Shown in pieces: positions 9,865 through 62,515 of a stretch of DNA of 64,000 bases. The notes below the pieces were generated by a model that ran no database searches, was not told the origin of the DNA, and saw nothing but the letters and a program-made list of their open reading frames with translations. Origin of the DNA: Dimorphilus gyrociliatus. Taxonomy: Eukaryota; Animalia; Annelida. Positions within the stretch are counted from its first letter, which is position 1, and every line of letters begins with the position of its first letter. The stretch is from the NCBI GenBank assembly GCA_904063045.1, contig CAJFCJ010000003.1, positions 1,736,001 through 1,800,000 on the forward strand. Reading direction: 5' to 3'. The position numbers and the translations under genes were made by a program.

Positions 9865-10575
9865 ATGCTGGCCTTCAGAGAAGATTACAATGATAAGGAA
9901 TGGCCTGATAACTTTATAAACAATTGGAGGAAGCCAGATGAAGAAAATCATTCAAACCTCCTTCATCTCCACGAATTCGTAAAAGGTTTGACCATAAAAG
10001 GAAAATATTTGGAAATTGGAAGTGGTCCATCCCCTATTGGAATTTTTTCGGCTAGCACAAAATTTGACGACATTACCTTATCTGATTTTTCTGTAGCTAA
10101 TATTGATCGTTTGAAAAAATGGAAGAGTGGAGGAAATCTCAGCAACATCATGACTCTGATTGAGTATGTGGCCAAGTTGGAAGGACGTGATGTTAATCAG
10201 CTGATGACTATTTCTCTGAGCAGAGTGAAGAACATTAGACACGCTGACTTGCTCAATGACGAAATATTACCCAAAGACGACAATAAATACAGTGCAATAT
10301 CTATGAACTTTGTACTTCTTTGTGCTTGTAAAACTAAGGAAGATCTGTTCAAAGCATTCACAAAGCTGTACAACAAGCTGACTCCAGGTGGAAGATTATT
10401 TGATTTCGGAGCCCTGAATACAAACAATTACAATGTTGGAGGAAGATTGTTTTCACACTGTGAAATCGATTTGGAAACGCTGGTAGTATTGGCGGAGAGA
10501 GCTGGCTTCAAAGTATTAAAGCAAGAGAAGCTAAATATGAATACACCATGCTACTGTATTGTTGCCAGTCGTTGA
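9865..10575 (+). CDS. NNMT/PNMT/INMT-family SAM-dependent small-molecule methyltransferase, single coding exon, 236 aa
   Basis: YLEIGSGPS (family motif I, cf. LIDIGSGPT), ITLSDFSVAN, LTPGG and NYNVGGRLFS (cf. YYMIGEQKFS); uninterrupted ORF. Confidence 0.88.
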   Translation: MLAFREDYNDKEWPDNFINNWRKPDEENHSNLLHLHEFVKGLTIKGKYLEIGSGPSPIGIFSASTKFDDITLSDFSVANIDRLKKWKSGGNLSNIMTLIEYVAKLEGRDVNQLMTISLSRVKNIRHADLLNDEILPKDDNKYSAISMNFVLLCACKTKEDLFKAFTKLYNKLTPGGRLFDFGALNTNNYNVGGRLFSHCEIDLETLVVLAERAGFKVLKQEKLNMNTPCYCIVASR

Positions 10576-12333: not shown

Positions 12334-15300
12334 TTATGACAGCGAATTATCATAAATTGAAGTTATTTTAAGATTATCAAAAAACGCTGTTGAAAAATTT
12401 GTAGTGCCCAAAGCAAGAAACCCATTGGACGATGAAGTTTCTGGGAGTATCGTAGTAAACAAAAATTGACCATTCATTTGCAAAGTCAGTGAGCTTCCCT
12501 AAATCAGGAGAAGTTTTACAAGCTAACTAATAACTAGGTTATTGCATACCTTCAAAACTATCTTGACAGTCAACCATTGATTAAAATGTAGCATATCGCT
12601 TGGAATTTCGGCATAAGTTCGATTATTTTTAGCTGGGATTAATGAGTACCGTATTATAAATATCTTAAAAAATATTAACCTTACAAAAATTTCCTGCAAC
12701 AGTTATTAGTTTTTTCTTCAAGTTAATATAAACAAAAGTTCCAGGACTATAACAAATATTACAGCCGCCATCCCTAACCCGAGCTCCTAAAACGATTCCA
12801 TCGCTTCCATTTTTGGGAACAAGAAAATCAATTGCAAATTGCACATCTGACCTATAGCAATAATTGACCTAACGTCATCAAATAAATTGACAAACTGCTA
12901 ACCATAGATAATTTCCAAATACAGCTACTGGTCTCGACATAGGGAAAGGGAGACAGGTGTCAACCGGAGGTTTAACAACCATTTGCTGAATGACTCCTTT
13001 GCGATTTTCATAATCTGTAAAATGCACCTCAAAAGTTCCCGCTTGTTGGGCAATGTTATATGGTTCCTCTGAGTCTCTATAATCTGCAAAATTTATTTTT
13101 TGGCGTTTTTTTTACTAATTGTTATATATTGAAAAGTATATTTTAGTTACTGTCAAAACTATCGAAGTAGGGCAAAGGAAACGGTACTGATTTTGGTGAC
13201 TCTTTGTGGAAGCCTTTACTACCTGTACTAAGAGTCGTTAGCGTAACAACAGTATTCCGTTTTAGGTGAAGTGTAAACGTTGAAGTGGAGTCAATCTGTT
13301 AAAACAAACTTCCCCATAAATTTTTTTAGATAGTAGCCATACTTGGAAAGTTTTAATTTCGATAAAATAGCTATCTTCAATGGCTTAAATTTCTTTGAAT
13401 TTAAGCATATTTTTATCAAAACTTTCTAAAGAAGTAACAAAAATAAAAAAATGAGTTAATTTGAAGCAATTGATAAGATTTATTAGAATGCATAAGTAAT
13501 GATAAAAATATCCTAATTTCGTAAAATTTTACGTGTAAAGTTCTCTAAACGGATATTTTTCGTGTATTGATGAAGGATATAGTAGAAAAACCGTTTAAGC
13601 AACCAACATACCTTTGATAGGAAATCACAAAGAAAAAAGTAAAACCTGTAAGACAACTGAGTTGCCTAGGATTTTTGCTAAGTAGAGTTTTATAATACAT
13701 TTTTCAGCGAAAATAGGCATTTAGTTAATTAAAATAACCAATAGAAATTATAGAAAGTACTCCTAAATAGTTAAAGAAATATAAAGTGAAAAATTTTTCT
13801 AGACTCACAAATATTGGATTTTGCCTCTGAAAAAGAGCTTCTTTCTTGTAGTCCTTAGTGAAATCACTCTGCCACACTTTGAGAGTAGTTATAGCTTTCT
13901 AAGAGAAACTAATTAGAGATAGGATATTATTAGATATAAAACATACAAATTTTCCTGAAAGTTTAAACGAAGCAATTTGATGCGAAGCCACTGGATATTT
14001 TGGCATGGGGTAAAAACAGGGAAACTCTTGGGGGTCCTTCCATAAAAAAAGCAACTCATTAGAATATAGATTGATGACTTGATAATATCAACCATAGTTT
14101 CAACAATAATAGTTAAGTGCTTTTCATCAGTTAAGCTTAAATATGTTCCTCCACCAGTTAAGTTTCCAACTCCATTTGAATGTCTTAGAAAGTACCAGCC
14201 AGGTTTCGTAAATTGAGTATGGTGAGCTGAGGCCCAAATAGGAGAATTTACTTCGTAATGACCACTCCAGGGTTCGCTGGCTGTCATTAAGCTACATCTA
14301 CCATAAGGAAGATTAGGATAATAACTGGCTATAAGATTCCAGGCAATCGATCTAGGTATTGTGGAAAACATGAGTAAATATTATTAATTAAAAGTAAATA
14401 CAAACGCTGTAAAAAACCCTTGAACGTAGCGTTCATTCAGGACCTATTATTAATAGAAATTGAAATAATTATATACATGTGTGATATGTACCCTAGCCCA
14501 GCATCCTCCTCCAAGTAGGTTATTCTCAGCACTATATTCTTCTGAACCCCATAGTATTTTGTCTGTTAACAGAGACTTCAGGGGATTTGCCCCAGTGAAA
14601 CCAGGATAGTGCACACTGCGTGAAAAATTTTTTACAAGCGACAAAGTGCTTTAGGTATTTTTACCCGATAACGTCTACAACTTGGGCAAGTTCAGGATCA
14701 TTAAGCATATCGTCTAAAATATTCCATTCGCCATCGGCTGCAACTATCTTTGTCTTCTGGTAGCCTAATTCATCTAAACGTTTTCTCAACATCTGATTTA
14801 TATAATTTTATATTTAAATATCACTTATCAAAAGAAATAACCTTAATGTAAAGAATATCGTAAGGTCTCTCATTCCATATCTAAAATAGTAAACAAAAAC
14901 TAAATAATTTTAAAAGTTCAATTTAAAACTAACTCCAACGAAATCTATAGTTAAATTATGAAATTTTTCTGCTCCAATAATCCAATTTGTTATATACTTA
15001 ACAAGTTTTGTTCTATTAGAGTAAGGGTTAGACTTTCCCCCACCAAGCCATCCTGGAAAAACCCACGGCAAACCGTAAAGTAAAATTTCTGGATTTCTCT
15101 TATAAAAAACATTTATTAGTCGAAATTGCAATTAATAAAAAAAGAAGGTACTTTTTTAGCTTCTTTCATTAAAAACCACTCGTAGCCTCTGTTGAAATTC
15201 AAGTCATTTTCTTCATGCATATGAGACGCTTCGGTTCCGTCTTCATCAATACATATTAATATCAAACTAACAATTTAGAAATTGCGTTACCCGTGCTCTG

Positions 15301-15666
15301 TGAATCACCGCCAATCTCCACTTTTAAAATTTGTAATGATGCTGCGAAATTAGGCTGTTTTTTATGCAGAATTTTAAAGGGAGTATTAAGACTTGAAAAG
15401 TTACTGACTTTAAAGAGAAAATCCAATATTTCATCACGATAAATCTTGGGATAATTTATCAGTAATTTTGAAGTTGCCTACGGAATAAATCTTGTTAAAA
15501 TTGAAATCACTCAGGCTTCAAAAAGTACTCCTCCTCCGCTGATAGCACCTATTCCATCAAATCGTCGACCATATCCATTTCTATCAGAAATTAAGTACTG
15601 AAAAGCATAACCGTGGGTTTGTAAACTTGTTAAGTAACTTAAAATAAGAGTTAAAGTAATTTTCAT
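12334..15666 (-). CDS. GALC: Galactocerebrosidase (GH59), multi-exon
   Basis: Signal peptide [21 protein letters not shown]; [14 protein letters not shown]; [11 protein letters not shown]; LWGSEEYS...GGGCWAR; WNLIASYY...PWSGHYEV...WASAHHTQF; C-terminal NGFLALGT...FDN. Stop at 12334-12336. Confidence 0.95.
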
Positions 15667-15686
15667 TGCTCTTTGTATATATCTAC

Positions 15687-15712
15687 AGTCACATGATATA
15701 GCTCATGTGACT
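15687..15712. promoter_or_regulatory. Inverted pair of MiT/TFE M-box (CLEAR-like) elements upstream of GALC
   Basis: AGTCACATGA-tatagc-TCATGTGACT is a perfect 10-bp inverted repeat, and each arm contains TCATGTGA. It lies 21-46 nt upstream of the ATG of a lysosomal hydrolase. Confidence 0.6.
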
Positions 15713-15740
15713 AGTTACCTTCAACTTGTAACAACTATCA

Positions 15741-15780
15741 TGATTGGTCACATTTCATTTCGTAATAACGCCTGACGTCA
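15741..15780. promoter_or_regulatory. CCAAT box (TGATTGGTCA, 15741-50) and full CRE (TGACGTCA, 15773-80) in the GALC/CEBPG divergent promoter
   Basis: Exact consensus matches in the 538-bp gap between the divergent ATGs at 15666 and 16205. Confidence 0.5.
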
Positions 15781-16204
15781 CAAGGATTTCCCCTGTATTC
15801 CCTAACGTTTTCAGCGTTTTACCGACCCCCGTTCTTAATTACCGGCACTTTTCCCGATTTCAAGAGGGTAAATCATCTATTTTATCAATTCTTATTCAGA
15901 ATATTAAATTGCCTAAAAAAACATTAGACTGTAATTTTTAAATTTTGGTTAAGATTCGATTTCGTAAGGGCATTGATACAGGTGTGATGATGAATTCCGT
16001 TATCCTCCTATTTTTTATACCGCTATATGATAAATTGATAATTAATAGAGTATTTAGCAAGATATTATTAATCAAAGCACGACGATTTGTAAAGTACGCC
16101 GCGGTCATTTTGATAACGCTTTTCTTAGCGACATCTAGTGGAGGCAATTGTTGTGAAATCGTCAGTGAAAGTCGTTAAATTGTTTCAGTTTAAATCTCTA
16201 AAAA

Positions 16205-16471
16205 ATGGCTCCAATGAAACCGGGAACAGCGCGAGTGCGATCATCACCTCTTGATAAAAATAGTCAGGAATACCGAGAGGGTCGTGAAAAGAACAATATT
16301 GCCGTTAGAAAAAGCAGAATGAAAAGTCGCTTAAAGCAATTAGAAACAAATCAGCTGGTGGAAGAATTAAAAAAAGAAAATGCAGAATTAAAAGAAAGAG
16401 TTAATCTGTTATCTAAAGAATTGGGGGTTTTAAAAGATTTGTTCATCACTTATGCAGAGGACAAATCTTGA
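16205..16471 (+). CDS. CEBPG: C/EBP gamma-like bZIP factor, 88 aa, single exon
   Basis: SPLDKNSQEYREGREKNNIAVRKSRMKSR basic region and zipper ending LSKELGVLKDLF (cf. CEBPG LTKELSVLKDLF); no activation domain. Confidence 0.9.
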   Translation: MAPMKPGTARVRSSPLDKNSQEYREGREKNNIAVRKSRMKSRLKQLETNQLVEELKKENAELKERVNLLSKELGVLKDLFITYAEDKS

Positions 16472-17166
16472 CGAAAATTTAATGTTATGACGACTTTAGT
16501 GGATCATTTTTTGTAGATTTCAATATTTATAACTTGCTTACAGAGTTGTTTCAGTTTGTCTTTATCTTTTAATAAAATTTTCAAAACTTTTCAATTTACT
16601 AAATAAATATTGCTTTTTTAAAAAATATATCAAAGTTTCTTTAATACATGTTGAATTAATTAGAAATATCTTTTGATGTTCTTCATCTATAATTTACCAC
16701 TTAAGTAAAAACTAAGTTATGAGGTAATCGAAATTACAGTTTTCAGACTAGCGAAAATTGTATATTCTATATAATTACATTTTTGAATGTTCACTACTAA
16801 AATAAAGAAAATTATATTTCTATCTACTGTGAGCCTGACTTTAAATGATAACTGCCCGTTTTTGAGAAACCTAGGTCAGCAGCCAGTAGCAAACATTGTA
16901 TAAAATATATTGTACAAACTAAATCACTCTTATAACACAATTTATCCGAGTGTACATATGTATGATATATATATATAAAGTAAACTTACATATATATACT
17001 GAAAAGAGGATAACAGAACATGAAAGAATCGCGTTAAAAATTTCTGAAATAATCGATCGTCATGCCAAAGAAATAAGTAAGGTGTTATATAAACTTTACT
17101 AAACATTCGAAAGTGCATAATAGATAGATACATTTCCCATAATATTTCAATATATTACGGAAAAAG

Positions 17167-19281
17167 TTACCAATCACCCTCAGTTTTTATTTTCTGTGCG
17201 ACTGGTATGCCATTAGAGCCAGGAACTAATCTTGCTGACGGAGAGTTATCAATACGAAGTAGTTCTTCTTCTAAATCAAATGTGGTATCAAAGTTGTTGA
17301 GCAGGCCATTTGAAGTAAAATTAGATTCATCATCTAACATAGGAGAGGAAGTAGCCGATGGACTTCTCCGTAACCTTCTAAGACCCCGATCCGTAACTTT
17401 TACTCGGCTCGGACTGCCTGGCCTTTTAAAGGTTTCACTTTCGCATGAGGGAAACACAGTTTGCATTGAAGGATAGCTTATCGTAGATGGTTGTAGTAAA
17501 CTCAAAATTCCGCTTTGCTGGGGTTTAGACTTATACTTCATTGATAATGAATGGATATAATCTAAGCAACGGAAGAGACGATTACGGTCGTCAGGTGGAA
17601 CTAGGCCAATATCGGCTAATGCAAGGTTTGAAATATCGCTGATCGCTTCCATCCATTTTCGTTCGAGAGGTAGTGCAGCTATTAGAAATTGTTAATTCAA
17701 CTAATTTTTCGTACAAAGGAAATTTAAAAACTTTCAGAAAAAGACAAGTTATACAAACCTAAATTTAAGGAATCTGGAGTATTAATTCTATCCCAATCTT
17801 TAGTAGCAACTTTAGTAGGAATTGGCGTAGAATTCGTCGGGAGCACCCGCTTTATTGCCTTCGGCTTTACACTGTAATACGATAATTCACTTATCTAAAT
17901 AAACCTATCTATTTAAACATTTTAAATCTTACATTTTTTCTTTTACTACTTTTCTTTTTTCTCCTTCAATTGCATCCTCAACGCTGCTCACGCTACGCTC
18001 TTTACTAGAGCGGGATTTATTGGACACATCACTTCCAACCATACCTATAAACTCATTGTTTTCGTTATAATTAGCATATGCTTCCAAAATTTTATATCTG
18101 GTTCTATATTCTTCTGAGAAGAAATTTTTTGAATGTGCTATGCGTAAGATATGTTGTTTTCCTGATTTCACCGTTGGATATTTATGCTTGCAAGTTGGAC
18201 AGTAATAAAATCCATTTTCATTGTGTTTTTTCTGATTTTTAGCGAATCGAATAAATTCCTCTCTTAACCTGTTTGAAACGTATTGTAAATTTTTCGGTTG
18301 GAATTGGCTATAATGTTGAAGAGTTGCGTCCATTACTTGCATGCATTTAACGCTCATATTTCCCTTTACTCTATATTTATCAAGTTCATCTGTATTTAAA
18401 GTTCGAGCTTCTGATTGCCTCTTTGGGCCACTATTCTTATTGGGCATGGATTTTATAATTTTAGATGTTTTTATAATAAACTTTCCAGCCATTCCTGCCG
18501 TTAAATTGTGTTTTTGTATTATGTGCTTTAGCACAGATATTCTTTGAAAATTTCGGTAAGAACACTTGGAACAAGCAAATATCTGGTGCGGTGAATTAGT
18601 AGGTTTCAATTTTAGATTCAATTTTTCTGGTTCTTCGGCTCTGACGTTTGTATTTTCTTCTGTATAATTAGTCAATTCTGTTTCCACAACGTCTTTTCCT
18701 AACTGATTCTCAAGGCGTGTCTTCCAGATATTGGATATTGGTAAATTTAAAGATTTTACAATATCTGGGTGCTGTCGGTTGCAATGTTTCACCATAATTT
18801 CAACACTGGATATAAATCTATCAGGATGGAGGGCACAAGTGAAAGATCTCGCATTCATGTCACCCCAATCGATCCCTTTATCGACACAAAGATCGTAAAA
18901 ATGCTCAAGAATCTTGTGACGATGTGTTTGGAAATGATTGTCATGTTTCCGACCTGACAGTTTGTACTTGCATACTCTGCAATAGTTTAGGTCCTTTATT
19001 AAAGATTTCTCACGCGAAACTAATAAAGCATCCTCATCAATATCTGTTGCACTTTTGTTGGCTTTGCTTTGAAATGTTCGATGTGTTTTACGTTGTCCCA
19101 TAGGCAAAGTTAAATTGTTTATTCTGTTTTCTTCACTTTCAGCCTCAGATGCGGATTCTTCAGAAAGACCTTTCCCACTGACACATTCATTGTTCCTAAA
19201 GTTATTACCTAGTTTAATCCGTAGATTAAATGTCTTATCACAGTTTGAATTTCGGTTAGCAGATTCACTTTTGTAAGACAT
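17167..19281 (-). CDS. Multi zinc-finger protein (about 4 dispersed C2H2/matrin-like fingers) with a conserved-looking C-terminal block
   Basis: Large exon (ATG 19281) contains CRVC..HFQTHRH, CALH..HCNRQH, CSKC..HIIQKH and CPTC..HILRIAH. It splices through a small exon near 17870-17756 to the terminal exon (ERKWMEAISDISNLALADIGLVPPDDRNRLFRCLDYIH...*). Confidence 0.65.
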
Positions 19282-20381: not shown

Positions 20382-23319
20382 ATGACTGATGTGGAGGCTA
20401 GACTTGCTGAAATTCAGCGCACTCTAAATAGGCTTGGGGAAAATGTTGAGCAATTATCTCAAACTCAGAAGTTTCGGGTTAGTTACCATGCTTAGCTTAT
20501 GGTTTCTTGTTTTTTAGATTATTCAGATTTTATTATTTATTTTCGAAAGCATCGTATCGTTTTCAAAATCATTGTATACAACGACATTGAAATAGTCACA
20601 CCTGTACCTTGTGTAGTATAGTATATTGTGTGACACTTTGCCTAAACATCCAACTTTGAATCAAAATGCCTAGATGAATATGTTTGAAAGCCGTGATAGG
20701 TGAACCGGATATCTATGAACGGTTTTGCAATATTCATTGTTCATTGTTAGTACGGATGTTTCTTATGCACTATAATCAATATATTATTCTCTTTATAGTT
20801 CATACTTCCTGTTATTGTTGACTAAATATTATTGAAGAATTGGACCAGATATTGGCCCTTTACTGTAAAAAAAAGATGTTTTTTACGATTTAAAATTTGA
20901 TGTTCACACTGCTGATTAATATTAAATTTATTTTAATACTTTATCAGGTGGCTGAGTCAAACACTGCGAAGGGAAATGTTTTTAGTTTTGGTGATGATGA
21001 AAATGAAGAAAGAGGAAACTGGACTGGTAGGCTGGATTTCTTGCTGTCATGTCTTGGTTATGCTGTAGGTTTGGGGAATGTTTGGAGGTTTCCTTATTTA
21101 TGCTATAAAAACGGAGGAGCCGTATTTTTTGTCCCTTACGGTATTGGTTATTCACAAAATATAATTAGTTCTCATCACTATTTGAAAATTTCCAGTCATT
21201 ATGTTAGCTTTTGTTGGTATGCCAGTTTTTATGTTCGAACTCTCCATTGGTCAATTTACCAGTTCTGGAGCTTTAACTTGCTGGAAATTTGCTCCATTAT
21301 TCAAAGGCGTAGGAGTCGGGATGGTAATCGTTTCTGGAATGGTAGGAGTTTACTATAACATGATAATCGGATGGTCTATTTGGTACCTTATTTCATCCTT
21401 TATAAATGTAAAGGATTTGGAATGGAGTGACTGTGATAAAAAATGGAATAATCCAAATTGCACAGGGTTAATGAATAAGGACGCGGCACTAATGTGCAAT
21501 TCATCAATAAAGGATGAAGGCTTTGATAATATTTCCAGAGGGCCGGATGGTTGGTGTTATGTTTCAAGAAATCTAACTTTCGGAAATTTCAGAGATACGT
21601 TTCATAATGTTCCAATAGGAATTTACGATAAAGACCTACACAAAGCTCTAAAAACAAATCACGAGGTATTTAACACAGATTTCATTTTTATTTTTCATAG
21701 CAAGCTCATATTTCAGAATCATACGAAAATGGAACTACCAACAGAGCAATATCTATACAACTACATGCTTAAAAGAAATGATTTTGAAAATGGAAAGTTA
21801 GTTACAGAGTATAACATGGATAATTTTGGATCCGTCCAGTGGGACTTAACTTTGGCTTACATTGCTGCATGGATTATTGTGTTTTTGTCTTTGTGTAAAG
21901 GAGTAAAATCTTCTGGAAAAGTTGTTTATTTCACAGCTCTCTTCCCGTATGTTGTCCTTATAATTCTTTTTGTAAGAGGAATTATTTTGGATGGTTCGAA
22001 AGATGGCATAGATTTTTATCTTATAAACGTGGACACTAGTAAATTAGAGGATTCAGTTGTTTGGAAGGATGCTGCAGTTCAAATCTTTTTTTCGTTGTCG
22101 GCTGCCTGGGGTGGTCTAATATGCTTGTCTAGTTACAATCGATTTCATAATGATTGTTTGAGAGATACATTAATTGTTTCGATAGGAAACTGCTTGACAT
22201 CTTTCTTTGCTGGTTTCGTGATATTTTCTTTTATAGGCTTTCTTGCACGTGAAACGGAACAAGAAGTCGAAGACGTTGCTACGAGTGGTATTGGTTTAGC
22301 CTTTACAGTTTATACATACGCTGTCACCCTTATGCCTGTTGAAGGACTTTGGGCTGTTCTTTTTTTCTTGATGTTAATAACTCTAGGGCTAGATTCTGAA
22401 TTCGCTCTTGTTGAGACAGTAACCACGTCAATCATCGATCAATGGGAGAGCTCATTGAGACCTAAAAAAAGTTTGGTTATTTTTATTACTTGTGTTGTCT
22501 TTTTTCTGCTTGGATTACCAATGTGCTGTAACGCTGGAGGTCATATGCTTCAATTGGTGGATACTTTCGCTGGTGGATGGAATGTTATGTTAATAGCCTT
22601 GTGCGAATGCCTTGGAATTATATATGTCTATGGTTCGTTTTAATTACAGCTTATTTTTGCATGAAATTAATCTGTTAATTTCAGGTGGATTTAGATTTTG
22701 TAAGGATATTAAAATAATGATTGGTCAAAGTGGATGCTGTGGTGCTTTACCTTGGGAATGCTGTAAATTTTGGTGGCTGTTGAACTGGGCAATTCTAACA
22801 CCTATTGGTGTTTTGTTTATTATGATATTTTCTTGGGTTAAGGTATTACTGATTCAACAAACAAAACCCTTAATAATAACTTTTTTATAACATTCAGTAC
22901 GAAAGAGCAACATGGGATAGCTATGTATACCCTGATTGGGCACAAGCATTAGGCTGGCTCATGACTTTAGCTGTGGTGGCTGGAATAGTTATTACACCGA
23001 TTTTCCTAGCTATATTAGCAATTAGAGAAGGAAAAGTAAGTTTTGAATACTTTTATGTTAAATAGCTATTATTTTTGAATTTCAGAGCTTGAAGTCTTTG
23101 ATAACGCCTACACGCGATTGGGGCCCAGCCCTTTCGCAGCATAGGCGACTTGTTGACTACGTAGATGATTTTGTTATTGATCCAAAATCTGATGGAGAGC
23201 TAGATTTGCATGATGTTAAGGTTAATGTTGTTAGCAATGATAAATCAGCCAAAACAAAAGCCAATCGCAATAATAACATACTTCAGATTGCTTCTTTCAG
23301 CTCTGGAACAAATTTTTAA
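20382..23319 (+). CDS. SLC6 Na+/Cl- dependent amino-acid transporter, GlyT2/proline-transporter-like
   Basis: [37 protein letters not shown] (Gly, not Asp, in TM1, typical of amino-acid carriers); [10 protein letters not shown]; [29 protein letters not shown]; LGLDSEF. First exon MTDVEARL... splices in phase 0. Confidence 0.92.
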
Positions 23320-50342: not shown

Positions 50343-51686
50343 TCAAAGCCTAACAACGGAATTCGAGCGATGATCAGAATAGTTAACGCTAAAACTGGAA
50401 TTTGATAATGGAGCGTTATAACGATTATTTCGTCTAGTTCTCAGTCTATTTTTTGGACACCAATGAAACAAAATTTTTGAAAACGCTCTTCTAAAATCTT
50501 TCATTGAACATGCGTAGATAACTGGATTCATTCCGGAATTAATGTAACCTAGCCAAGTGAAGACAGGAAACAGAATTTCACCGTGTTTGATACAATTGCT
50601 GCATAGACCTAATACAAATAAAGAAATAGTGAAAATCGTTACAAAAAAAGCTTATAGCTCCTCACCTGTAAGGACATTTAGGACAAAAAATGGCACCCAA
50701 CATATACAAAAGACCCCTATAACTATACCCAAAGTCTTAGCTGCCTTTTGCTCCTTAGCAAGTTTAGATAGTTTTCGACTCAAGGCAAAATGCTTCCATT
50801 TCCTTGAGACCATTCTTGGAGGTCGAATATGCTGTGTATAGCAATTATTTGGATTGATCAAGTGAGCTGGGGAATTAGGGCATTCCGAATCTGAGTCGGT
50901 GGTTTCAGCATATCTATAAGCTCCACCCCTGTGCATCCTTAACGTCATTGTTTCACCTGATTGCCCATCATTAACTAGTACTTTCGAACCACATTTTAAA
51001 CTTCTAGTTTGTTCACATGCTGCTACATATATCTTGTAATAAGCAAACATTATTATAAAAACGGGGCAGTAAAATGAAATTATCGATGAGAAGATGAGAT
51101 AATATACGTCTTCTGTAAAAGCGCATTTGTCGACTTCAATAGGTTCGGGAACAGTTGCTCTCCACCACAAAATGGCCGGAAACGAGATTGCTGACGAACA
51201 AATCCAGACTAGAGCGATGAGTATCAATGCCCTCCCTGTCGACATCTTTCCTGGATAAGCTATCGGATCTGTAATGGCCCAATATCGATCCAAAGATATA
51301 ACACTAAGATTTAAAATAGACGCCGTGCTTGCTAAAACATCAAAACTGTGCCAGACATCGCACCAATCTCTTCCAAAATACCAAACGTTATCAGTTAGTT
51401 CCATGACAATTGAGAAGGGCATTACAAGAGACCCGATAACAAGGTCAGCAACGGCTAATGATACGATAAAATAATATGTAACAGTTCGTAGATAACGTTC
51501 TCTAACAACCGCAATTATAACGAGCATATTACCACCAATAGTAATGAGAGCAAAAGTAGTTAGCAAAAGGCCTAAGGCTGGCTTGAATCGACGCCAACCA
51601 TCTTGATCCTGTGTAGTTCGATTTTCAGCGGTGATATTAATCCATTTACATAATAATGACGTGTCGTTGATTCGGCCGAGACACAT
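50343..51686 (-). CDS. Dop1R2: Invertebrate D1-like dopamine receptor (Dop1R2/INDR type), 2 coding exons
   Basis: WCDVWHSFDVLASTASILNLSVISLDRYWAITDP, VWICSSAISFPAILWWRA, TLRMHRGG, KEQKAAKTLGIV, exon 2 TWLGYINSGMNPVIYAC..DFRRAF. Confidence 0.88.
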
Positions 51687-56540: not shown

Positions 56541-59500
56541 TTAATATTCATCAATGAACGTAAATGTAGGTCCTGCGTTGGGTCCAATCATCGGATCAAT
56601 GCCTTCCTCAATAGGTGTTCTAACCAATTTTTCTCCTTGCACCAAGAGACTATACATCATACTCATACAAAATCGCATCTTATTTGTATGCCCATTAAAT
56701 AGTTCATGAAAACATTTTAATAGCTTTGTATACATTGAATCAAACTGTAAAGAATATCTATGAGCTTTACTGTTGATTTTATATTTCCATATTTGAGGAT
56801 CTTCTATCATGGGCCAGATACCGTCAGCCGCTAGAGGGCGATTAGGACCATTATAACTGTACGTTATGTTGCATGTTTGCAGATTTGTGCCGTTATGACA
56901 GTACTCAGTCTCCATCATGTATAGGTCACGGTTTTTCCCCTCAGAAATACAGGTTTCATTTGAATGAATTATTAAATCTCTTTCTTTGGCCATTTGAGAA
57001 AAAAGATAATAGTGTGAAAGATGTTTACTTGTTGTTAAAGGGTTACAAACGTCGGAACCCTCTCCCTCTTCCACAATTTGTGCTACTGCTCTTTTAGCAG
57101 TTCTTAAGTTAGTTACTGCAAATGGTTTTCCATCAACATCCGAATACCAATCATCATCTTTTACTTGTCGAGATTTTAACCCTGTAAAGATAGTAGTATT
57201 TTCTAGTTCAGCTTCCTTTTCTAACTGAATTATACCATGTAGAATATTGTTATATAGCTGAGATATTGTGTTTGGATTTGTTGTTATTGGGCATTTATAG
57301 GTAAGCACATCAGCATGAATGCTTTCTTTTAAGAGGTATTTCAGGCAACGGGTTTCAACAGTTGCTGCTGGTTTTTCAATTTCCATGAAAGTATGTTCAA
57401 TTCTACTTTTTGACAACGGCCCAAGAACCATTACTATATCCGGATTATTAGGTAGTGGCGACGGAAAAACAGGTACTGCGCTTGCTTCATTGAAAATAGG
57501 TTTACCACCTATACCATTTAAAATATTGGCAGCCAAAGTAGTATGAGCCATTTCCTGTATCATTATATGTTTTAAAGTTTTTTTTGCAGCTTTATTGTAT
57601 CCCGGTCGAATGGATAAAAGAGCTGTCATGTATAACGGGATTGTTGATAACTCAAAGCGAATTGCAGTTTGTATAGACCTTTTGATGTCATCTAAGCTTA
57701 CTTTCGGAGGGTTCCCAATCGTTGGGTTTTCAAGCCACCTCAAAATCATATTTGTAGTTTTTTTCGATAAATCTCTGGATATAGGCATAAAATTATGATG
57801 CTCTAAAGGCAGCGTCATTGCCATTTTCAGTGGTCGAAGTCTTTGTAATACGTTCGTAATATCTTCAAGATGGATGAAAGGTCTCATGACGGGATAGAGG
57901 TAAGCATAACGAGTAAAAACTTCGCGTACATTTCCGTACCAAGTGGGTTCTTTCACTTCAGGGAAGTCATAAAAAATATTTAAGTTTATCATTAAATCAC
58001 ACCATTGGCTTGTATTATTTTTAGACGTGTAATTGAGTAAAACGGTATAAATTTGACTATCGATGGTGCACTCCTTTCGATATTTCCCTAATTTAATACC
58101 TGGATTGTTGGCTTTAATATTTAACAATATAAGCCCGTCTTGATCAGTCCTTGTTGGTTCTGGTAGAGTTACGCCATCTTCAGGATCATTTATAGCAGGA
58201 TTGTCTGAATCACAGAAAAAATCTAACATAGGTCTTGGCCGCTTCATCCAGTTCAATGGGAGAAAGCTCGAAATTTTCAATCCGTCGATTGGCATTCCAA
58301 ATTGACTAGCATAAATTTCAAAACTATGTGTGTCATTTGGATCCATTCTCAAAACATTGTGAGTAAGACTGTGAACGATCACTCCATCAGAATTTTCACG
58401 TAGAACAATATTCATACAATTTTTGCCTTCCAGTTGAGCCACTAATAAAGGTATACTGCGTAGTCGTTCAACTGCTTTCTGATGATAAATTGTCATTTCT
58501 AATCCGTTCGGTGGAAACTCTTGAATACTGTTCATGTTATAAAGAAACATCTTGTTTTTGTATAAAACTGATCCTAAATCAGTAAAATCGTTTGGGCATT
58601 TACTAAAATTTGTATCATTTATAACATCTGTTGGAACAATTACGTGTAAGTTTTTCAAAATACCGTCATGAAGATCTCCATTTGGGCGCTTTCGAAAAGA
58701 GTTGCTAAAATCGACGAGTACAGAACTCTTTTCATAATTAACATGAAAAAAGGCGGTACAAAAATTTTCTTCGTATCGGATGTTACCACCTTGTCTAGGA
58801 TTACAGCCAAGTCCTTTTAGAACTCTTGTAAATCGATGAAATTGACGGGATTCCAAAGAATGTGATGGTCCTATTGTTCCACTGATTTCCCCGTACGTAA
58901 AATTATGCTTTGTTCTGTCTCGTACATATCTATCCATTGTGAATTTGATTGACAGCTTACCTTCTTTTTTACCCCAAAAATCGATTGTTCGCTCCTTTAA
59001 CTGTTTTACAATTTTAGAGTTCTCGTCAACTTCTTTCATCCAAGACAGAGAATATAGTGCACTTTTTATGTATGAACTAAATCTAGGTGCTCTAAAAAGT
59101 TCGGGAATACGTGGCCATAAATCTTGAATAACTGCCACTTCCATTTTTCCTCTAATGCTATGGCCAATTTGAACTTCTAAATCAAAGAATTCACTGTTTT
59201 GGCACATAGGATCAAGATCAACAAATTTCCCGGAGTGATAAGTCATTGGTCCTGAAATGTAAAAGTAATTTCTATTCAGCCTCGAGTAAAAACACTGTAT
59301 ATTCGTTAATACACAAACATTTACTAACTTAATATCGGTATATTATTAATAATCCATCTATCTTTTAGGCAGTTGTGCAAAAGCACTTTCAAAATGGAAA
59401 CGTCAGAAAGAATAGTTTCGTTATATTTTGATATTTGTAGCGTGTCAATTTGCTTCACATATCAACGGAAAAATGAATTGATATTCAAAAAATGTAGAAA

Positions 59501-62500
59501 AGTACTTAGTAATTGAAAATTTAAATTAGAGTCTTCTTAAGCATACTAGTAAATATTTCAAAGCCGACTTTAATAAACCTTCAACCATATTCTTCAAAAT
59601 TAATTATAGCTTTTGAATTGTTAAACGAGCAAGTTTAAAACCTATTATAGTCTGCATTGGATTTCCTAATACTTTTGTAAAGTCCTAAATGAAAAATTAA
59701 GCATGTATCAGTTAAGTTTGCTGAGTCATTATAGGTTCAGAGTGTATCTTCGAGAAAAGTGCTTCAGCTTCCCTCTTCATGTTTTTGATAAATATATAAA
59801 AGATATTTTAAGACGATCATCAAAGTAAAAATCTTTTGAACTCTTATTGAGGTCATTCATTAATTACTTCTTTATACTATTTAATGGACTTTAATGAACA
59901 TATGATAAAGATTTTCGACACTTTAACACAACCTTTTATTGAGCTATGTATTTTAAATAAAATGCTAGCATTGTTTAATCTTCATGATTGTTATCTAATT
60001 AAAATAAAAAGTACCTCTTTTCTGAAAAAGTGTCAGATATAATAAAATATAATTTTAATTAGCTAAAGTATATTCGCCTCATACGTCAAAAAGACTTTTA
60101 AAATATTGTAAATAAACAAGGGATTCATTTCGTATTTTTCTTTGATGTATAGCTTTGATTGTAAGACACATTCTTATTTATATGTTCATTGGTGCTATCA
60201 GCTGTAAATTACTTGCATTAAAACACCAACGTTGTCAAACCTGTGTTGACCACAATCATGTATAGGAATAATTAGACAGATTGATAAAAATTTATTAGAT
60301 GATTGGATAAGAAAAATCACAACAACTGCTATCGAAGTTTTGAAAATGCCAGATAATTGTGATTATTCTCATCTCATATTTAGTATACGCTTCTTTTAAT
60401 ACGTTTTACACAAAGTAACCTAAAACACTCCCAACGCAGATGGCTTTTACGTATTTGTTAACATTTAAAAACACATTTTTTGAGAAAATCAAATGACAAG
60501 TGCATTGTTTATGATGATCTAAAATTTAAAAAGATTTCGGAGAGCGGTGCGAAAATCTCGATTACAAACGAAATACAAGAGAGGATTAATAGTGCTGTTT
60601 ACGTAAGCCAACCAGTAAGAGTTTTCATATGCAACAGGATTAACGCAATCATTACAATACGCTACCATAGGCCACATAATACAGAATGGGAGCCAACAAA
60701 CCAAAAACATCAGAATAATGACTCCCAAAGTACGGAGCACTCTCGTATGTTGCTCTGTTTTTCTTCTATTTGAGTTTTTAATTTTGATTTCATCTTGACC
60801 ACTTGTTTTCGTAACAGATATATCGACAGTAACTTCGTCATCATCTATTGATGGTCCCATATTTTTATCCATAGCCTCAACTTTAAGTTTTTGCCTGTAC
60901 AAAGCTCTCAAAGATCCTGTATAGAAAACTATCATAGCTAAAATAGGAATATAATACACGCAAATTGCTTGAGACACAACAAATTTTTTGTCAGGAACGA
61001 AATAGCAATCTGTAGATATTTTTTTAAGATCTAATACTCGAAAAGTTATTACAGGTGGAAGCCACACTATCAACCCAACAATCCAACTGCCAACAGACAT
61101 CAATGTAGATCGTCTAATGGTTGCAAGAGACTTATATTGCAACGGGCGATTTAGTGCCAAAAATCGATCATATGCCACTAATATTAAATGAAATATGGAA
61201 ACAGTACAACAAGTAAAATCCAAAGCAACCCAGGCAGTACATAAATTATTTCCAAGAGGCCAATAGCCATAGATTGTAAACACATTCATTCCACCCATAA
61301 CAAAGACACCTACTATTAAATCGGCCACAGCAAGAGAAACAACATACACATTCGAAGCGTTTCGCAATTTTTTATCATATATTACGCAAAGAATAACGGT
61401 AATATTAGCCAGAACTGTGATGAGAGTGAGTAATATAAGTGGAGGGGCTAAAACTTCTGCGTTTCTTGACGATTGCTCTGTTATGTTCGAGCTCATCTTG
61501 CCAATTGACGTGGCGTCAGACAACCTGATTTTTAAATATAAACGCAGGACAAATAATTCGATTGGGTTCATTCTTTCAATTAAGTCAAAGAATACTATAA
61601 AAATAGCTCTCTACACTTACACCTTAATAAAATGTTAATATAATAATTGGCCCTATTTATATTTAACACATGTGAGTTTTCCAAACTAAATCTTCCTTTT
61701 AAATAATTTTTAATTTTAATGCGAGCTACTGACCATAAACAGGTTGACCAATGATAGGATCTTGCTTTGGATCTGAAGTGCAATAGCCATTTTTGTAGCA
61801 AACCCTCCTAATAGTAACATTTTCAAATCGGAAATCGTTTGATCCCTAAGCAAAGCACATACAAATTTAACAAATCAATATCAACAAGAAAATACTAAAC
61901 CATTGGAGAAAATCCTCCTTGTGTTGTATTTCCATAAATTATATTCCATTGAGTAAACTCTCTCATATTGTAGTGCTTTGCATTGTTATTTGCCGTTGGT
62001 GGATCAGCGTACAAAAAACCAGAAAAATGAAGTCTGGGCCAACCAAGATAATTGGTACCGGAATATTTCGTAGCTGTACTTTCAAACATCTAAACTTTTA
62101 CAACAGTAATTAGGAATAAATACCTTTACGACAAAAAAGAGCAAATTCATCTTCACCGCCTCTACAATTTGGTTTCTCATCGCATACTTCACTCCATTCA
62201 ATACAATTTCCATCATAGCATTCAAATTCACAAGCTTTGTAAAATCTTATAAGAGATAATTATGCATAATCTTTGAGCTTACTTTTATTAAGGAACAAGT
62301 TTGTTGATTTTCTTAGGAAACCTTCTTGTAAAAACTTTTGTTGGACTTTCAATTGAACGAAAATCCCTACCAGTATTGTGATGATAAAAAATAGAATTAC
62401 ATAACTGTCAAAATTCAAAAAAGATAAAATCACTATATTAAAACGTTTCAGGTACCAACGTTAAGCGTGTTACAGATATAACCCTTTTTTTCTCCTCAGT

Positions 62501-62515
62501 AGCGCTTTTCTGCAT
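56541..62515 (-). CDS. Type II membrane protein: TM anchor, LDLa, then VioB/RebD/StaD-like enzyme with C-terminal ferritin-like domain (1094 aa, 6 exons)
   Basis: Exons 62515-62460, 62404-62283, 62234-62124, 62073-61901, 61845-61734, 59251-56541; all GT-AG and phase-consistent, total 3285 nt. VioB-like motifs: PRLHFSG..ADPPTAN, GSNDF, KFVDLDP, YAYLYPVM, FMPISRDLS..ILRWL, QTAIRFELSTIPLY..ALLSI, QEMAH..LAANIL, EEGEG, SHY, AGPTF. Confidence 0.88.
60519..61496 (-). CDS. Orphan aminergic-type class A GPCR (muscarinic/histamine-H1-like), single coding exon, nested in intron 5 of the VioB-like gene
   Basis: 7 hydrophobic segments; SLAVADLIVG, TM3 Asp (VALDFTCC), DRF, CWLP, YWLAYVNSTINPLLY. Likely start MSSNITEQ at 61496 (the ORF extends to 61571). 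Confidence 0.9.
   Translation of the reverse strand: MSSNITEQSSRNAEVLAPPLILLTLITVLANITVILCVIYDKKLRNASNVYVVSLAVADLIVGVFVMGGMNVFTIYGYWPLGNNLCTAWVALDFTCCTVSIFHLILVAYDRFLALNRPLQYKSLATIRRSTLMSVGSWIVGLIVWLPPVITFRVLDLKKISTDCYFVPDKKFVVSQAICVYYIPILAMIVFYTGSLRALYRQKLKVEAMDKNMGPSIDDDEVTVDISVTKTSGQDEIKIKNSNRRKTEQHTRVLRTLGVIILMFLVCWLPFCIMWPMVAYCNDCVNPVAYENSYWLAYVNSTINPLLYFVCNRDFRTALRNLFKF

What the first reader, a model, noticed from the sequence alone, without database searches (positions are those of the whole stretch)
56541..62515. Animal membrane-anchored VioB-like enzyme: a domesticated bacterial indole-dimer-synthase homolog
Seen: six spliceosomal exons join into one 1094-aa ORF: MQKSATEEKKR, a hydrophobic anchor (YVILFFIITILVGIFV), an LDLa module, then a roughly 1000-aa body. 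Established: Chromobacterium VioB (violacein) and RebD/StaD (rebeccamycin/staurosporine) couple two indole-3-pyruvate imines. From my recall of VioB, it has the same motifs in the same order (PRIHFRG..PTAN; GNNHF; YELVYPFM; YYMPSTRELS..FLKYL; KAVDLELSVMLQY..AYSI; EEMIH; QGEG; SHF; AGPP). Inference: the gene came by horizontal transfer from bacteria, probably from the wider uncharacterised VioB-like family (DLDP, IDSQIY and PTW motifs), and was retargeted to the secretory pathway. There it could dimerise imines made by secreted L-amino-acid oxidases, giving an animal-encoded route to bis-indole pigments or defence compounds. I know of no description of this architecture.
Basis: partly seen in the sequence, partly recalled or inferred. 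Interest (0 to 1): 0.95.

Follow-up and report, generated by a model that had tools for sequence, protein, structure and literature searches.

The report
Old animal relative of VioB enzymes
This marine worm makes a membrane-anchored, outward-facing relative of the bacterial enzymes that build violacein-type pigments; the same gene occurs in lancelets, sea squirts, acorn worms, sponges and a jellyfish, so it is an old, unstudied animal gene family rather than a recent bacterial import.

Summary
Spliced RNA contigs confirm six GT-AG exons that give one 1094-aa ORF: a short basic tail, one hydrophobic anchor, an LDLa module, then a ~1000-aa body with a Pfam PF12902 ferritin-like domain (E 1e-50). 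The window comes from the annelid Dimorphilus gyrociliatus.

The VioB link is real but distant.
- A good model (pLDDT 87) has RebD and VioB as its only full-length Swiss-Prot fold matches (E 1e-24 and 1e-22, 14% identity).
- The VioB equivalog HMM cutoff (1250 bits) is never approached.
- The protein belongs to a large uncharacterised subfamily of about 900-aa proteins (5152 cluster representatives).

The reading as a domesticated horizontal transfer is not supported as stated.
- Homologs exist in Branchiostoma, Ciona, Styela, Clavelina, the hemichordate Glandiceps, the sponge Ephydatia and the jellyfish Sanderia. Several carry LDLa or TSP1 modules.
- The bilaterian sequences form one clade. 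Four phyla share a phase-1 intron at the same glycine codon.
- All animal sequences lie on one side of the branch that holds every sampled bacterium.

Any transfer therefore predates Bilateria. Metal-ligand-type residues are intact and dN/dS is 0.10. The function (extracellular oxidative coupling) remains inference. Three earlier scan notes cover this same window; none covers other DNA.

The parts
62460..62515 (-). Coding part of exon 1. ATG at 62515, 56 nt, encodes a basic cytoplasmic tail. The RNA contig reaches at least 62551 as 5' UTR.
   Evidence: Joint 62404/62460 in X2 contigs. In-frame stop upstream of the ATG. Phase bookkeeping.
62283..62404 (-). Exon 2. Holds the single hydrophobic segment YVILFFIITILVGIFVQL (a signal anchor) plus a linker.
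   Evidence: Joints. Highest Kyte-Doolittle window in the protein, 2.66 at aa 21.
62124..62234 (-). Exon 3. One LDL-receptor class A module, 111 nt, phase 1-1.
   Evidence: Joints. PF00057 at 27.0 bits against a cutoff of 24.1. Conserved in the relative at L003:5836-6192.
61901..62073 (-). Exon 4. Start of the bacterial-type body (YLGWPRLHFSG..PTANN).
   Evidence: Joints. Aligns to residue 2 onward of bacterial 913-aa homologs. VioB HMM positions 4-29, E 0.014.
61734..61845 (-). Exon 5. Continuation of the N-terminal domain. Its donor is also used for a second joint, to 61524.
   Evidence: Joints 61844/61900, 59250/61733 and 61522/61732. 84% identical in L003.
59252..61733 (-). Intron 5 (2482 nt, phase 1, in a Gly codon). 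It is the ancient shared intron and hosts a same-strand GPCR ORF at 60519-61571.
   Evidence: Same column and phase in B. lanceolatum, Clavelina and Glandiceps. 7tm_1 E 5.8e-57.
56541..59251 (-). Exon 6. Holds 903 codons plus the stop: the beta-rich domains and the ferritin-like catalytic domain.
   Evidence: ORF. One 3280-nt RNA contig covers it and 30 nt of exon 5. Model pLDDT 86.8.
56559..57713 (-). Ferritin-like helical domain (ORF aa 512-896; the Pfam core aa 525-753 maps to 56988-57674). It holds the invariant residues E, ExxH, E, E and H.
   Evidence: PF12902 E 1.1e-50. 3HL1 at Z 26.9, rmsd 2.4 A. Invariant residues.

Best explanation
This is the Dimorphilus gyrociliatus member of an old, vertically inherited bilaterian gene family. 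It encodes a secretory-pathway version of the long PF12902 proteins, the superfamily that contains the heme-dependent imine-coupling enzymes VioB, RebD and StaD.

Shown:
- The mRNA is spliced from six exons.
- The protein has a short basic N-terminus and one hydrophobic segment that most likely acts as a type II signal anchor. That topology would place an LDLa module and the ~1000-aa body outside the cell or in the lumen.
- The body consists of beta-sandwich domains followed by a ferritin-like helical bundle. The bundle keeps every family-invariant polar residue: E725, E758-x-x-H761, E817, E922 and H938 in full-length numbering.

Inferred:
- The bundle binds iron or heme. The protein acts as an oxidase on a small, probably aromatic amino-acid-derived substrate, by oxidative C-C coupling or a related reaction. 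The product would be an extracellular pigment, defence compound or cross-link.
- The animal-specific conserved cysteines and the LDLa or TSP1 modules are adaptations to the extracellular milieu. They were added by phase-1 exon shuffling at an intron just upstream of the body.
For: Gene structure and expression.

Organism and host context: the SLC6 exon in the same window is 96% identical to DgyrCDS2274 on the same 3,232,594-bp contig. The neighbours are animal genes.

Superfamily:
- PF12902 at E 1e-50.
- RebD and VioB are the only full-length Swiss-Prot fold matches, at E 3e-24 and 1.7e-22.
- Clade members hit the VioB HMM collinearly, down to E 2e-12.
- 3HL1 at Z 26.9.

Subfamily: full-length alignment to bacterial 913-aa proteins; 5152 representatives.

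Animal distribution.

Monophyly of the bilaterian clade: 99 and 97 SH-aLRT.

Shared phase-1 introns.

Selection: dN/dS 0.10 against the 69%-identical ortholog; invariant residues are kept.

Extracellular adaptation: 16-52 cysteines in bilaterian members against a bacterial median of 6, with clade-specific conserved positions. LDLa or TSP1 modules occur in relatives.

Chemistry of the known enzymes: PMC10851217.
Against: - No member of this subfamily has a known activity. Identity to VioB/RebD is about 14% and global TM is only 0.36.
- The window protein itself reaches the VioB HMM only with a 25-aa N-terminal piece, at E 0.014.
- No amino-acid oxidase or other pathway gene lies nearby; the neighbours are GPCRs.
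- Topology is inferred from hydrophobicity and charge only.
- The run type of X2 is not on record; it is taken as RNA because its contigs lack introns.
- The tree is unrooted. Vertical descent from the metazoan ancestor and an ancient transfer cannot be told apart.
Confidence: 0.7

Rival explanations
1. The gene is a bacterial gene acquired by horizontal transfer in this lineage and retargeted to the secretory pathway. There it dimerises indole-3-pyruvate imines made by secreted L-amino-acid oxidases, giving bis-indole compounds.
For: The family is overwhelmingly bacterial. The fold matches RebD and VioB. One bacterial relative sits two genes from a PF01593 amino oxidase in a cluster-like context. 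Fungal lodA/lodB amino-acid-oxidase loci carry PF12902 genes (PMC4417212).
Against: Homologs occur in at least six animal phyla. The bilaterian sequences are monophyletic and share introns. No animal sequence nests inside the bacteria. The VioB equivalog cutoff is missed by more than 1200 bits. No oxidase gene is in the window. Most bacterial contexts do not pair the gene with an oxidase.
Confidence: 0.1
2. Two or more independent ancient transfers. The sponge-type intronless clade and the bilaterian clade entered animals separately from related bacterial donors.
For: The two animal clans are separate, meet the bacterial clan at one node, and have entirely different conserved-cysteine patterns. 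The sponge-type genes are intronless and tandemly duplicated.
Against: Both clans lie on the same side of the well-supported bacterial branch (99 SH-aLRT). That is what a single origin predicts. A cnidarian sequence also falls on the animal side.
Confidence: 0.2
3. It is not a small-molecule biosynthetic enzyme. It would be an extracellular ferritin-like or catalase-like protein that handles metal or peroxide, or cross-links matrix.
For: After 3HL1, the nearest solved folds are Dps, bacterioferritin and manganese catalases at Z about 9-11. The N-terminal domains are Ig/MG-like, as in adhesins and complement C3. No pathway partners are nearby.
Against: Z values of 9-11 for helical bundles are within the range of unrelated matches, according to the tool's own note. 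The only characterised full-length relatives are coupling enzymes. Bacterial relatives sit in secondary-metabolite contexts: ebo clusters, P450, NRPS-like A-T, aminotransferase.
Confidence: 0.15

Closest known systems
VioB / RebD / StaD (iminophenyl-pyruvate dimer synthase, chromopyrrolic acid synthase; TIGR04492; Swiss-Prot Q9S3V0, Q8KHV6)
   Same: Same overall length and domain order: an N-terminal PRxHF..PTAN start, beta-rich domains, then a C-terminal PF12902 ferritin-like bundle. They are the only full-length fold matches among reviewed proteins (E 1e-24 and 1e-22). HMM matches in clade members are collinear.
   Different: About 14% identity and global TM 0.36. HMM scores of 13-46 bits against a cutoff of 1250. 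No adjacent Trp oxidase. The animal protein has a membrane anchor, an LDLa module, many cysteines and introns. Its activity is unknown.
Uncharacterised bacterial long PF12902 proteins (about 900 aa; e.g. MEM7130273.1 from Chloroflexota, and Streptomyces, Chitinophaga and Undibacterium homologs)
   Same: 25-31% identity over the whole body. They share the motifs VDLDP, IDGQVY, PTW, MPxSRDLS and QGEG and the same invariant polar residues. An AFDB cluster representative matches at TM 0.67.
   Different: The bacterial proteins are cytoplasmic-type, with a median of 6 cysteines and no LDLa or anchor. In at least 9 of the 79 loci the gene is split into two genes, and two plasmid homologs are also split. 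It often sits next to ebo clusters or biosynthetic genes.
Animal homologs: Branchiostoma (KAI8489964.1, XP_078572607.1, CAH1249889.1), Glandiceps XP_077992063.1, Ciona LOC100180317, Styela LOC120338304, Clavelina LOC143461065
   Same: Same clade (97-99 SH-aLRT). Shared phase-1 intron at the Gly codon before K-x-VDLDP, and a phase-1 intron just before the body. Shared conserved cysteines. Extracellular modules at the N-terminus.
   Different: About 28-32% identity. Tunicates use TSP1, B. belcheri has three LDLa modules, and the annelid has a signal anchor plus one LDLa. Only the dinophilids have a GPCR nested in the shared intron.
PDB 3HL1, ferritin-like protein CC_0557 of Caulobacter (stand-alone PF12902 domain)
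   Same: Z 26.9, rmsd 2.4 A over 257 residues, 24% identity with model residues 512-896. phmmer E 1.7e-5.
   Different: It covers only the C-terminal domain. It comes from structural genomics and has no known function.

Membership tests
VioB/RebD/StaD equivalog (TIGR04492) | Whole-protein score at or above the curated cutoff of 1250 bits | tested here: not met
   Only the exon-4 peptide hits, at 13.2 bits and E 0.014. The 901-aa ORF and its parts do not hit at E<=10. The best clade member scores 45.7 bits.
VioB/RebD/StaD equivalog (TIGR04492) | Same multidomain fold over the full length | tested here: met
   Foldseek against AFDB Swiss-Prot gives RebD at E 3.1e-24 (query 1-901 against 110-961) and VioB at E 1.7e-22. 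The next hits are at E>=5e-5 and are Ig-like only. Global TM is 0.36.
VioB/RebD/StaD equivalog (TIGR04492) | Genomic partnership with an FAD L-tryptophan oxidase (VioA/RebO/StaO) | tested here: not met
   The window neighbours are GPCRs, an SLC6 transporter, a methyltransferase and zinc fingers. Among 79 bacterial loci, no amino-oxidase family was among the recurrent neighbour clusters I annotated. An amino oxidase is seen in L001.
VioB/RebD/StaD equivalog (TIGR04492) | Heme cofactor and coupling of two indole-3-pyruvate imines | not testable with these tools
   Needs purified protein and LC-MS.
Pfam PF12902 Ferritin-like | Score above the gathering cutoff of 22.3 bits, and a ferritin-like helical bundle | tested here: met
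   173.1 bits, E 1.1e-50, profile positions 1-220 of 221. 3HL1 at Z 26.9.
Long PF12902 subfamily (beta-domains plus ferritin-like, about 900 aa) | End-to-end alignment and retention of the invariant polar residues | tested here: met
   aa 104-1082 aligns to residues 2-904 of P0004, E 3e-101. All residues invariant in at least 99% of 80 sequences are kept.
Bilaterian clade of the family | Monophyly with other animal sequences and shared intron positions | tested here: met
   10-row clan at 99 and 97 SH-aLRT. Intron at alignment column 493, phase 1, in both the window and B. lanceolatum. Clavelina is 3 columns away, phase 1. The Glandiceps acceptor is phase 1 in the same Gly codon.
Recently domesticated horizontal transfer | Nested inside a bacterial clade and absent from related animals | tested here: not met
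   All sampled bacteria form one clan, apart from the animals. Homologs occur in Porifera, Cnidaria, Hemichordata, Cephalochordata and Tunicata.
LDL-receptor class A module (PF00057) | Score above 24.1 bits with six cysteines | tested here: met
   27.0 bits, E 5.2e-6, on the translation of window:62125-62232:-.
Type II single-pass membrane protein | One N-terminal hydrophobic segment preceded by net positive charge, with no cleavage | tested here: inconclusive
   The hydrophobic segment at aa 20-38 is preceded by KKR..R. No signal-peptide or topology predictor was available. A cleaved signal peptide is not excluded.

The most novel reading that the evidence does not exclude
Marine invertebrates from sponges to chordates carry their own extracellular VioB/RebD-type oxidative coupling enzyme. 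If so, some aromatic amino-acid-derived dimers (bis-indole or related alkaloids and pigments of tunicates, hemichordates, sponges and worms), usually credited to symbionts, would be made by the animal. Alternatively, the family performs a so far unknown extracellular coupling chemistry in animals.
Probability: 0.15. Interest if true: 0.85.

Novelty: new variant of a known kind. Interest (0 to 1): 0.6.

Why it matters
Apart from VioB, RebD and StaD, I know of no characterised member of the PF12902 long-form superfamily, and none turned up in my searches. None of the PMC and bioRxiv searches I ran turned up a paper describing animal members.

This work shows three things:
- An intact, expressed and selectively constrained member sits in an annelid.
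- It belongs to a clade shared with chordates and hemichordates, marked by common introns.
- Animals have repeatedly fitted it with extracellular modules.

That defines a concrete, testable candidate for animal-encoded oxidative natural-product or matrix chemistry. It also corrects a tempting but unsupported story of recent horizontal transfer.

Tried and rejected
A split directly after KKR (donor at 62483) is out of frame with the hydrophobic exon. RNA shows the donor at 62460.
- **Third homolog search.** The search with the animal alignment A3 returned the same seven proteins and added nothing.
- **Getting a VioB sequence.** I wanted one for direct alignment and rooting. Two tblastn searches of plasmids found only split or stand-alone ferritin-like genes and no VioB. 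VioB-type outgroups are therefore missing and the trees are unrooted.
- **NCBIfam on parts of the ORF.** At E<=10 this gave no VioB hit.
- **PF12902 in a schistosome vesicle proteomics paper.** This looks like a label for ordinary ferritins. I set it aside.
- **LodA/GoxA resemblance.** It was suggested by language-model features at scores 0.60-0.65. Neither Foldseek nor VIA-align on the PDB backed it, so I dropped it.
- **Contamination.** Rejected. The gene has spliceosomal introns, GC content like its surroundings and animal neighbours on a 3.2-Mb scaffold.
- **Partner oxidase in this genome.** A search of the scan notes found nothing relevant.
- **Structure prediction.** The model lacks the 96 body residues encoded by exons 4-5, because the spliced protein has no reference.
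Full report
**1. What is in the sequence**

The minus strand carries a 901-aa ORF at 56541-59246. Upstream of it lie short coding pieces. One public run (X2) holds the locus at 100% identity, and its contigs lack the introns. They give five joints, all with CT..AC ends on the plus strand, which is GT..AG on the gene strand.

With the tool's stated cut offsets the exons are:
- 62460-62515
- 62283-62404
- 62124-62234
- 61901-62073
- 61734-61845
- 56541-59251

Joined, they give 3285 nt, which is 1094 codons with a single terminal stop. Two contigs cover everything. A 611-nt contig spans exons 1-5. A 3280-nt contig holds the last 30 nt of exon 5, all of exon 6 and about 540 nt beyond the stop.

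The ATG at 62515 has an in-frame stop two codons upstream. The only correction is that exon 1 runs 56 nt, to ..KKRVISVTRL. A donor right after KKR would break the frame.

X2 has no recorded library type. I take it as cDNA because its contigs are spliced and depth drops to 0-2 over most of intron 5.

**2. Organism and setting**

The SLC6 exon at 21201-22643 is 96% identical to DgyrCDS2274 of Dimorphilus gyrociliatus. The short introns of 48-55 nt fit that genome, whose median intron is 66 bp (PMC7854359).

Neighbours in the window are ordinary animal genes: two rhodopsin-type GPCRs, an SLC6 transporter, an NNMT/PNMT/TEMT methyltransferase, a C2H2 zinc finger and an AAA/M41 protease. GC content of the gene (0.32-0.36) matches the window. 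Contamination is excluded.

**3. Anatomy of the protein**

- Residues 1-19 are basic (KKR, R).
- Residues 20-38 are the only strongly hydrophobic stretch (Kyte-Doolittle 2.66).
- Exon 3 is a 111-nt phase 1-1 exon. It encodes one LDLa module that passes the Pfam cutoff (27.0 against 24.1 bits).
- From residue 104 the protein aligns end to end with residue 2 onward of bacterial 913-aa proteins (E 1e-97 to 1e-101). The alignment runs across exons 4, 5 and 6, so introns 4 and 5 interrupt the bacterial-type body.

Pfam finds PF12902 Ferritin-like at E 1.1e-50.

An AlphaFold2 model of the 901-aa exon-6 product was built with an 81-sequence alignment. It has mean pLDDT 86.8 and pTM 0.80. Residues 1-430 are beta-rich and residues 436-901 are helical.

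The helical part superposes on PDB 3HL1, a stand-alone PF12902 protein, at Z 26.9 and rmsd 2.4 A over 257 residues. Dps, bacterioferritin and Mn-catalase folds follow at Z about 10. Residues 287-427 resemble Ig/MG-type sandwiches.

Across 80 animal and bacterial sequences the invariant polar residues include E725, E758-x-x-H761, E817, E922 and H938 (full-length numbering). This is a ferritin-type ligand pattern. All are kept in the worm protein.

**4. Relation to VioB**

- The VioB equivalog model TIGR04492 (cutoff 1250 bits) hits only the exon-4 peptide, at 13 bits and E 0.014. It does not hit the 901-aa ORF or its parts, even at E<=10.
- 11 of 15 animal and animal-like relatives hit it at E<=0.1, the best at 2.1e-12. 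The matched pieces are collinear. HMM positions 2-29 and 3-118 match N-termini. Positions 508-633 match the region before and into the ferritin-like domain. Positions 786-861 match the C-terminal part.
- Among reviewed proteins with AlphaFold models, the model's only full-length matches are RebD (E 3.1e-24, query 1-901 on 110-961) and VioB (E 1.7e-22, query 1-895 on 130-933), at 14% identity. The offsets of 110 and 130 residues broadly fit the 96 residues of exons 4-5 that the model lacks. All other hits are at E>=5e-5 and cover Ig-like parts only. Global TM is 0.36, so domain orientation differs or is uncertain.

The protein is therefore a distant homolog with the VioB/RebD architecture, not a VioB ortholog.

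Its nearest kin form a large uncharacterised subfamily. A profile search of 1.84 billion representatives gave 5152 hits at E<=1e-3 and 1512 at E<=1e-30. A scan of one genome per prokaryotic species found 267 relatives in Chloroflexota, Acidobacteriota, Bacteroidota, Actinomycetota, Pseudomonadota, Cyanobacteriota and Myxococcota, at 23-31% identity.

**5. It is not alone among animals**

Cluster look-ups named the following:
- Branchiostoma belcheri KAI8489964.1, with three LDLa modules plus the body
- B. floridae and B. lanceolatum proteins
- the hemichordate Glandiceps talaboti XP_077992063.1
- Ciona intestinalis LOC100180317, two Styela clava loci and Clavelina lepadiformis, all with an N-terminal TSP1 domain
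- the sponge Ephydatia muelleri, with tandem copies
- the jellyfish Sanderia malayensis

AFDB cluster hits add LOC106173762. From memory I believe this is Lingula, but the organism field was masked. They also add further amphioxus and sponge-type entries.

Many unnamed relatives sit on eukaryote-like contigs with retrotransposon genes, split BTB genes and sparse ORFs. UniProt already auto-names some of these 'Iminophenyl-pyruvate dimer synthase domain-containing protein'. None of the literature searches I ran found a paper on animal members.

**6. Phylogeny and introns**

Two maximum-likelihood trees were built with LG+C20 PMSF: 86 rows in the first and 66 in the second, which included split bacterial forms. 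Both give three clans that meet at one node:
- a sponge-type clan (100 and 99 SH-aLRT)
- a bilaterian clan holding Glandiceps, four Branchiostoma sequences, three tunicates and the window with its relative (99 and 97)
- one clan with every named bacterium (97 and 99)

All animal sequences therefore lie on one side of the bacterial branch. None nests within the bacteria. The trees are unrooted, because no VioB-type outgroup sequence could be fetched.

Within the bilaterian clan the worm pair groups with the tunicates (84-87). Both are long branches, so I do not lean on that grouping.

Intron mapping gives independent evidence. I mapped introns by exact protein-to-genome matching on loci L089-L091. 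Window intron 5 is phase 1 and splits the Gly codon before K-F-VDLDP. It falls in the same alignment column and phase as an intron of B. lanceolatum, and within three columns, in the same phase, of one in Clavelina. In Glandiceps the acceptor is again phase 1 in the same Gly codon. The annotated Glandiceps model uses an internal donor and skips an in-frame stretch that is homologous to window exons 4-5.

All four species also have a phase-1 intron just upstream of the body start (SYLxWPR). This is the place where LDLa or TSP1 exons, which are phase 1-1, are attached. That supports the exon-shuffling note made on this window.

Bilaterian members share conserved cysteines that bacteria lack: window C170/C176, C410, C927, C976/C985 and C1038/C1053. 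Bacteria have a median of 6 cysteines, against 16-52 in the bilaterian members. The sponge-type clan has a different conserved set.

A related dinophilid contig (L003) has the ortholog at 69% identity, with the LDLa exon, exons 4-5 and the nested GPCR in the same order. dN/dS is 0.10, with dS saturated.

Together these results place the gene in the last common ancestor of protostomes and deuterostomes. A bacterial origin of the animal family is plausible, because the superfamily is mostly bacterial. If so, it is ancient, and my trees do not show it.

**7. Function**

What is established for the only characterised relatives: an FAD tryptophan oxidase makes indole-3-pyruvate imine, and the heme-containing RebD/StaD/VioB couples two imines at C-beta (PMC10851217).

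For this subfamily there is only context.
- In 10-12 of the 79 bacterial loci, from Cyanobacteria, Betaproteobacteria and Bacteroidota, the gene sits among ebo-cluster genes: DHQS-like EboD, TatD, a TIM-barrel EboE-like gene and a phosphodiesterase. An annotated Aureibacter plasmid shows it next to eboA-eboF.
- The ebo cluster is a cryptic pathway. It has been linked to export of scytonemin monomers to the periplasm before oxidative dimerisation (PMC6282210, PMC12904256).
- In actinomycetes the neighbours are a P450, an aminotransferase-methyltransferase fusion, an NRPS-like A-T protein, ABC transporters and, in one case, a PF01593 amino oxidase.
- Fungal lodA/lodB amino-acid-oxidase loci carry PF12902 genes (PMC4417212).

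These contexts point to oxidative secondary metabolism, possibly at or beyond the membrane. They do not fix a substrate.

I therefore commit to an extracellular or lumenal, metal- or heme-dependent oxidase that couples or oxidises an aromatic amino-acid-derived small molecule. My confidence in that chemistry is about 0.25-0.3, and in the identity and evolutionary placement about 0.9.

**8. The nested GPCR**

A complete 350-aa rhodopsin-type GPCR ORF lies at 60519-61571 (7tm_1, E 5.8e-57), on the same strand inside intron 5. RNA contigs also join the exon-5 donor to an acceptor at 61524, which is inside that ORF. This joint is out of frame and meets a stop after nine codons.

Depth over 61523-61733 is not zero. 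Transcripts that start in, or retain, that stretch probably encode the receptor. The arrangement is conserved in the relative. The genome paper reports no trans-splicing or operons in this species. The shared-donor isoform is unexplained.

**9. Verdict**

In kind, this is a new, animal-specific, extracellular variant of a known enzyme superfamily. It is present in databases, but none of my literature searches found it described.

Noticed in passing
window 60519-61571 (minus strand), acceptor at 61524: A complete rhodopsin-type GPCR ORF lies on the same strand inside intron 5. RNA contigs join the host exon-5 donor (61734) to an acceptor inside the GPCR ORF. The joint is out of frame and meets a stop after 9 codons. 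The nesting is conserved in the related species (L003:6606-7613).
   Followed up: partly
L043, L047, L049, L050, L056, L057, L059, L066, L079, L082, L037; L088:12217-18558: In Cyanobacteria, Betaproteobacteria and Bacteroidota the bacterial homolog sits directly beside ebo-cluster genes (eboA-F type: DHQS-like, TatD, UbiA-like, TIM barrel, phosphodiesterase). I did not find this association mentioned in the ebo papers I looked at.
   Followed up: partly
L050, L066, L067, L069, L070, L073, L079, L080, L082; L087:9001-11938; L088:9001-12061: In several bacteria the gene is split into two adjacent genes, an N-terminal beta-rich protein of about 580-640 aa and a ferritin-like protein of about 350 aa. 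The two halves are therefore separable modules.
   Followed up: partly
L089:4163-4360 (Glandiceps talaboti, XP_077992063.1): The annotated hemichordate model uses an internal donor. It skips an in-frame stretch (NMCQNYDIKKF...LIGTKVIG) that is homologous to window exons 4-5. The model is probably about 65 aa too short.
   Followed up: partly
L004:8001-11153 and 15195-18269; L084:8001-11150 and 14713-17886; L091: Sponge-type and tunicate homologs occur as tandem or inverted duplicates on eukaryote-like contigs. The sponge-type genes are intronless over the whole body and have their own set of conserved cysteines.
   Followed up: partly
window 9865-10575 (+): A single-exon NNMT/PNMT/TEMT-family methyltransferase (E 1e-23), a family that includes indolethylamine N-methyltransferases. 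It lies 46 kb from the VioB-like gene, so the proximity is probably coincidence.
   Followed up: no
window 50652-51686 (minus strand); L003:2151-3218 and 14805-16142: The VioB-like gene sits within a small cluster of intron-poor rhodopsin-type GPCR genes in both dinophilid species.
   Followed up: no
window 58846-59086: A marine metatranscriptome run (X1) holds a 241-nt contig of exon 6 with 3 differences. The gene, or a very close relative's copy, is therefore transcribed in an environmental sample.
   Followed up: no
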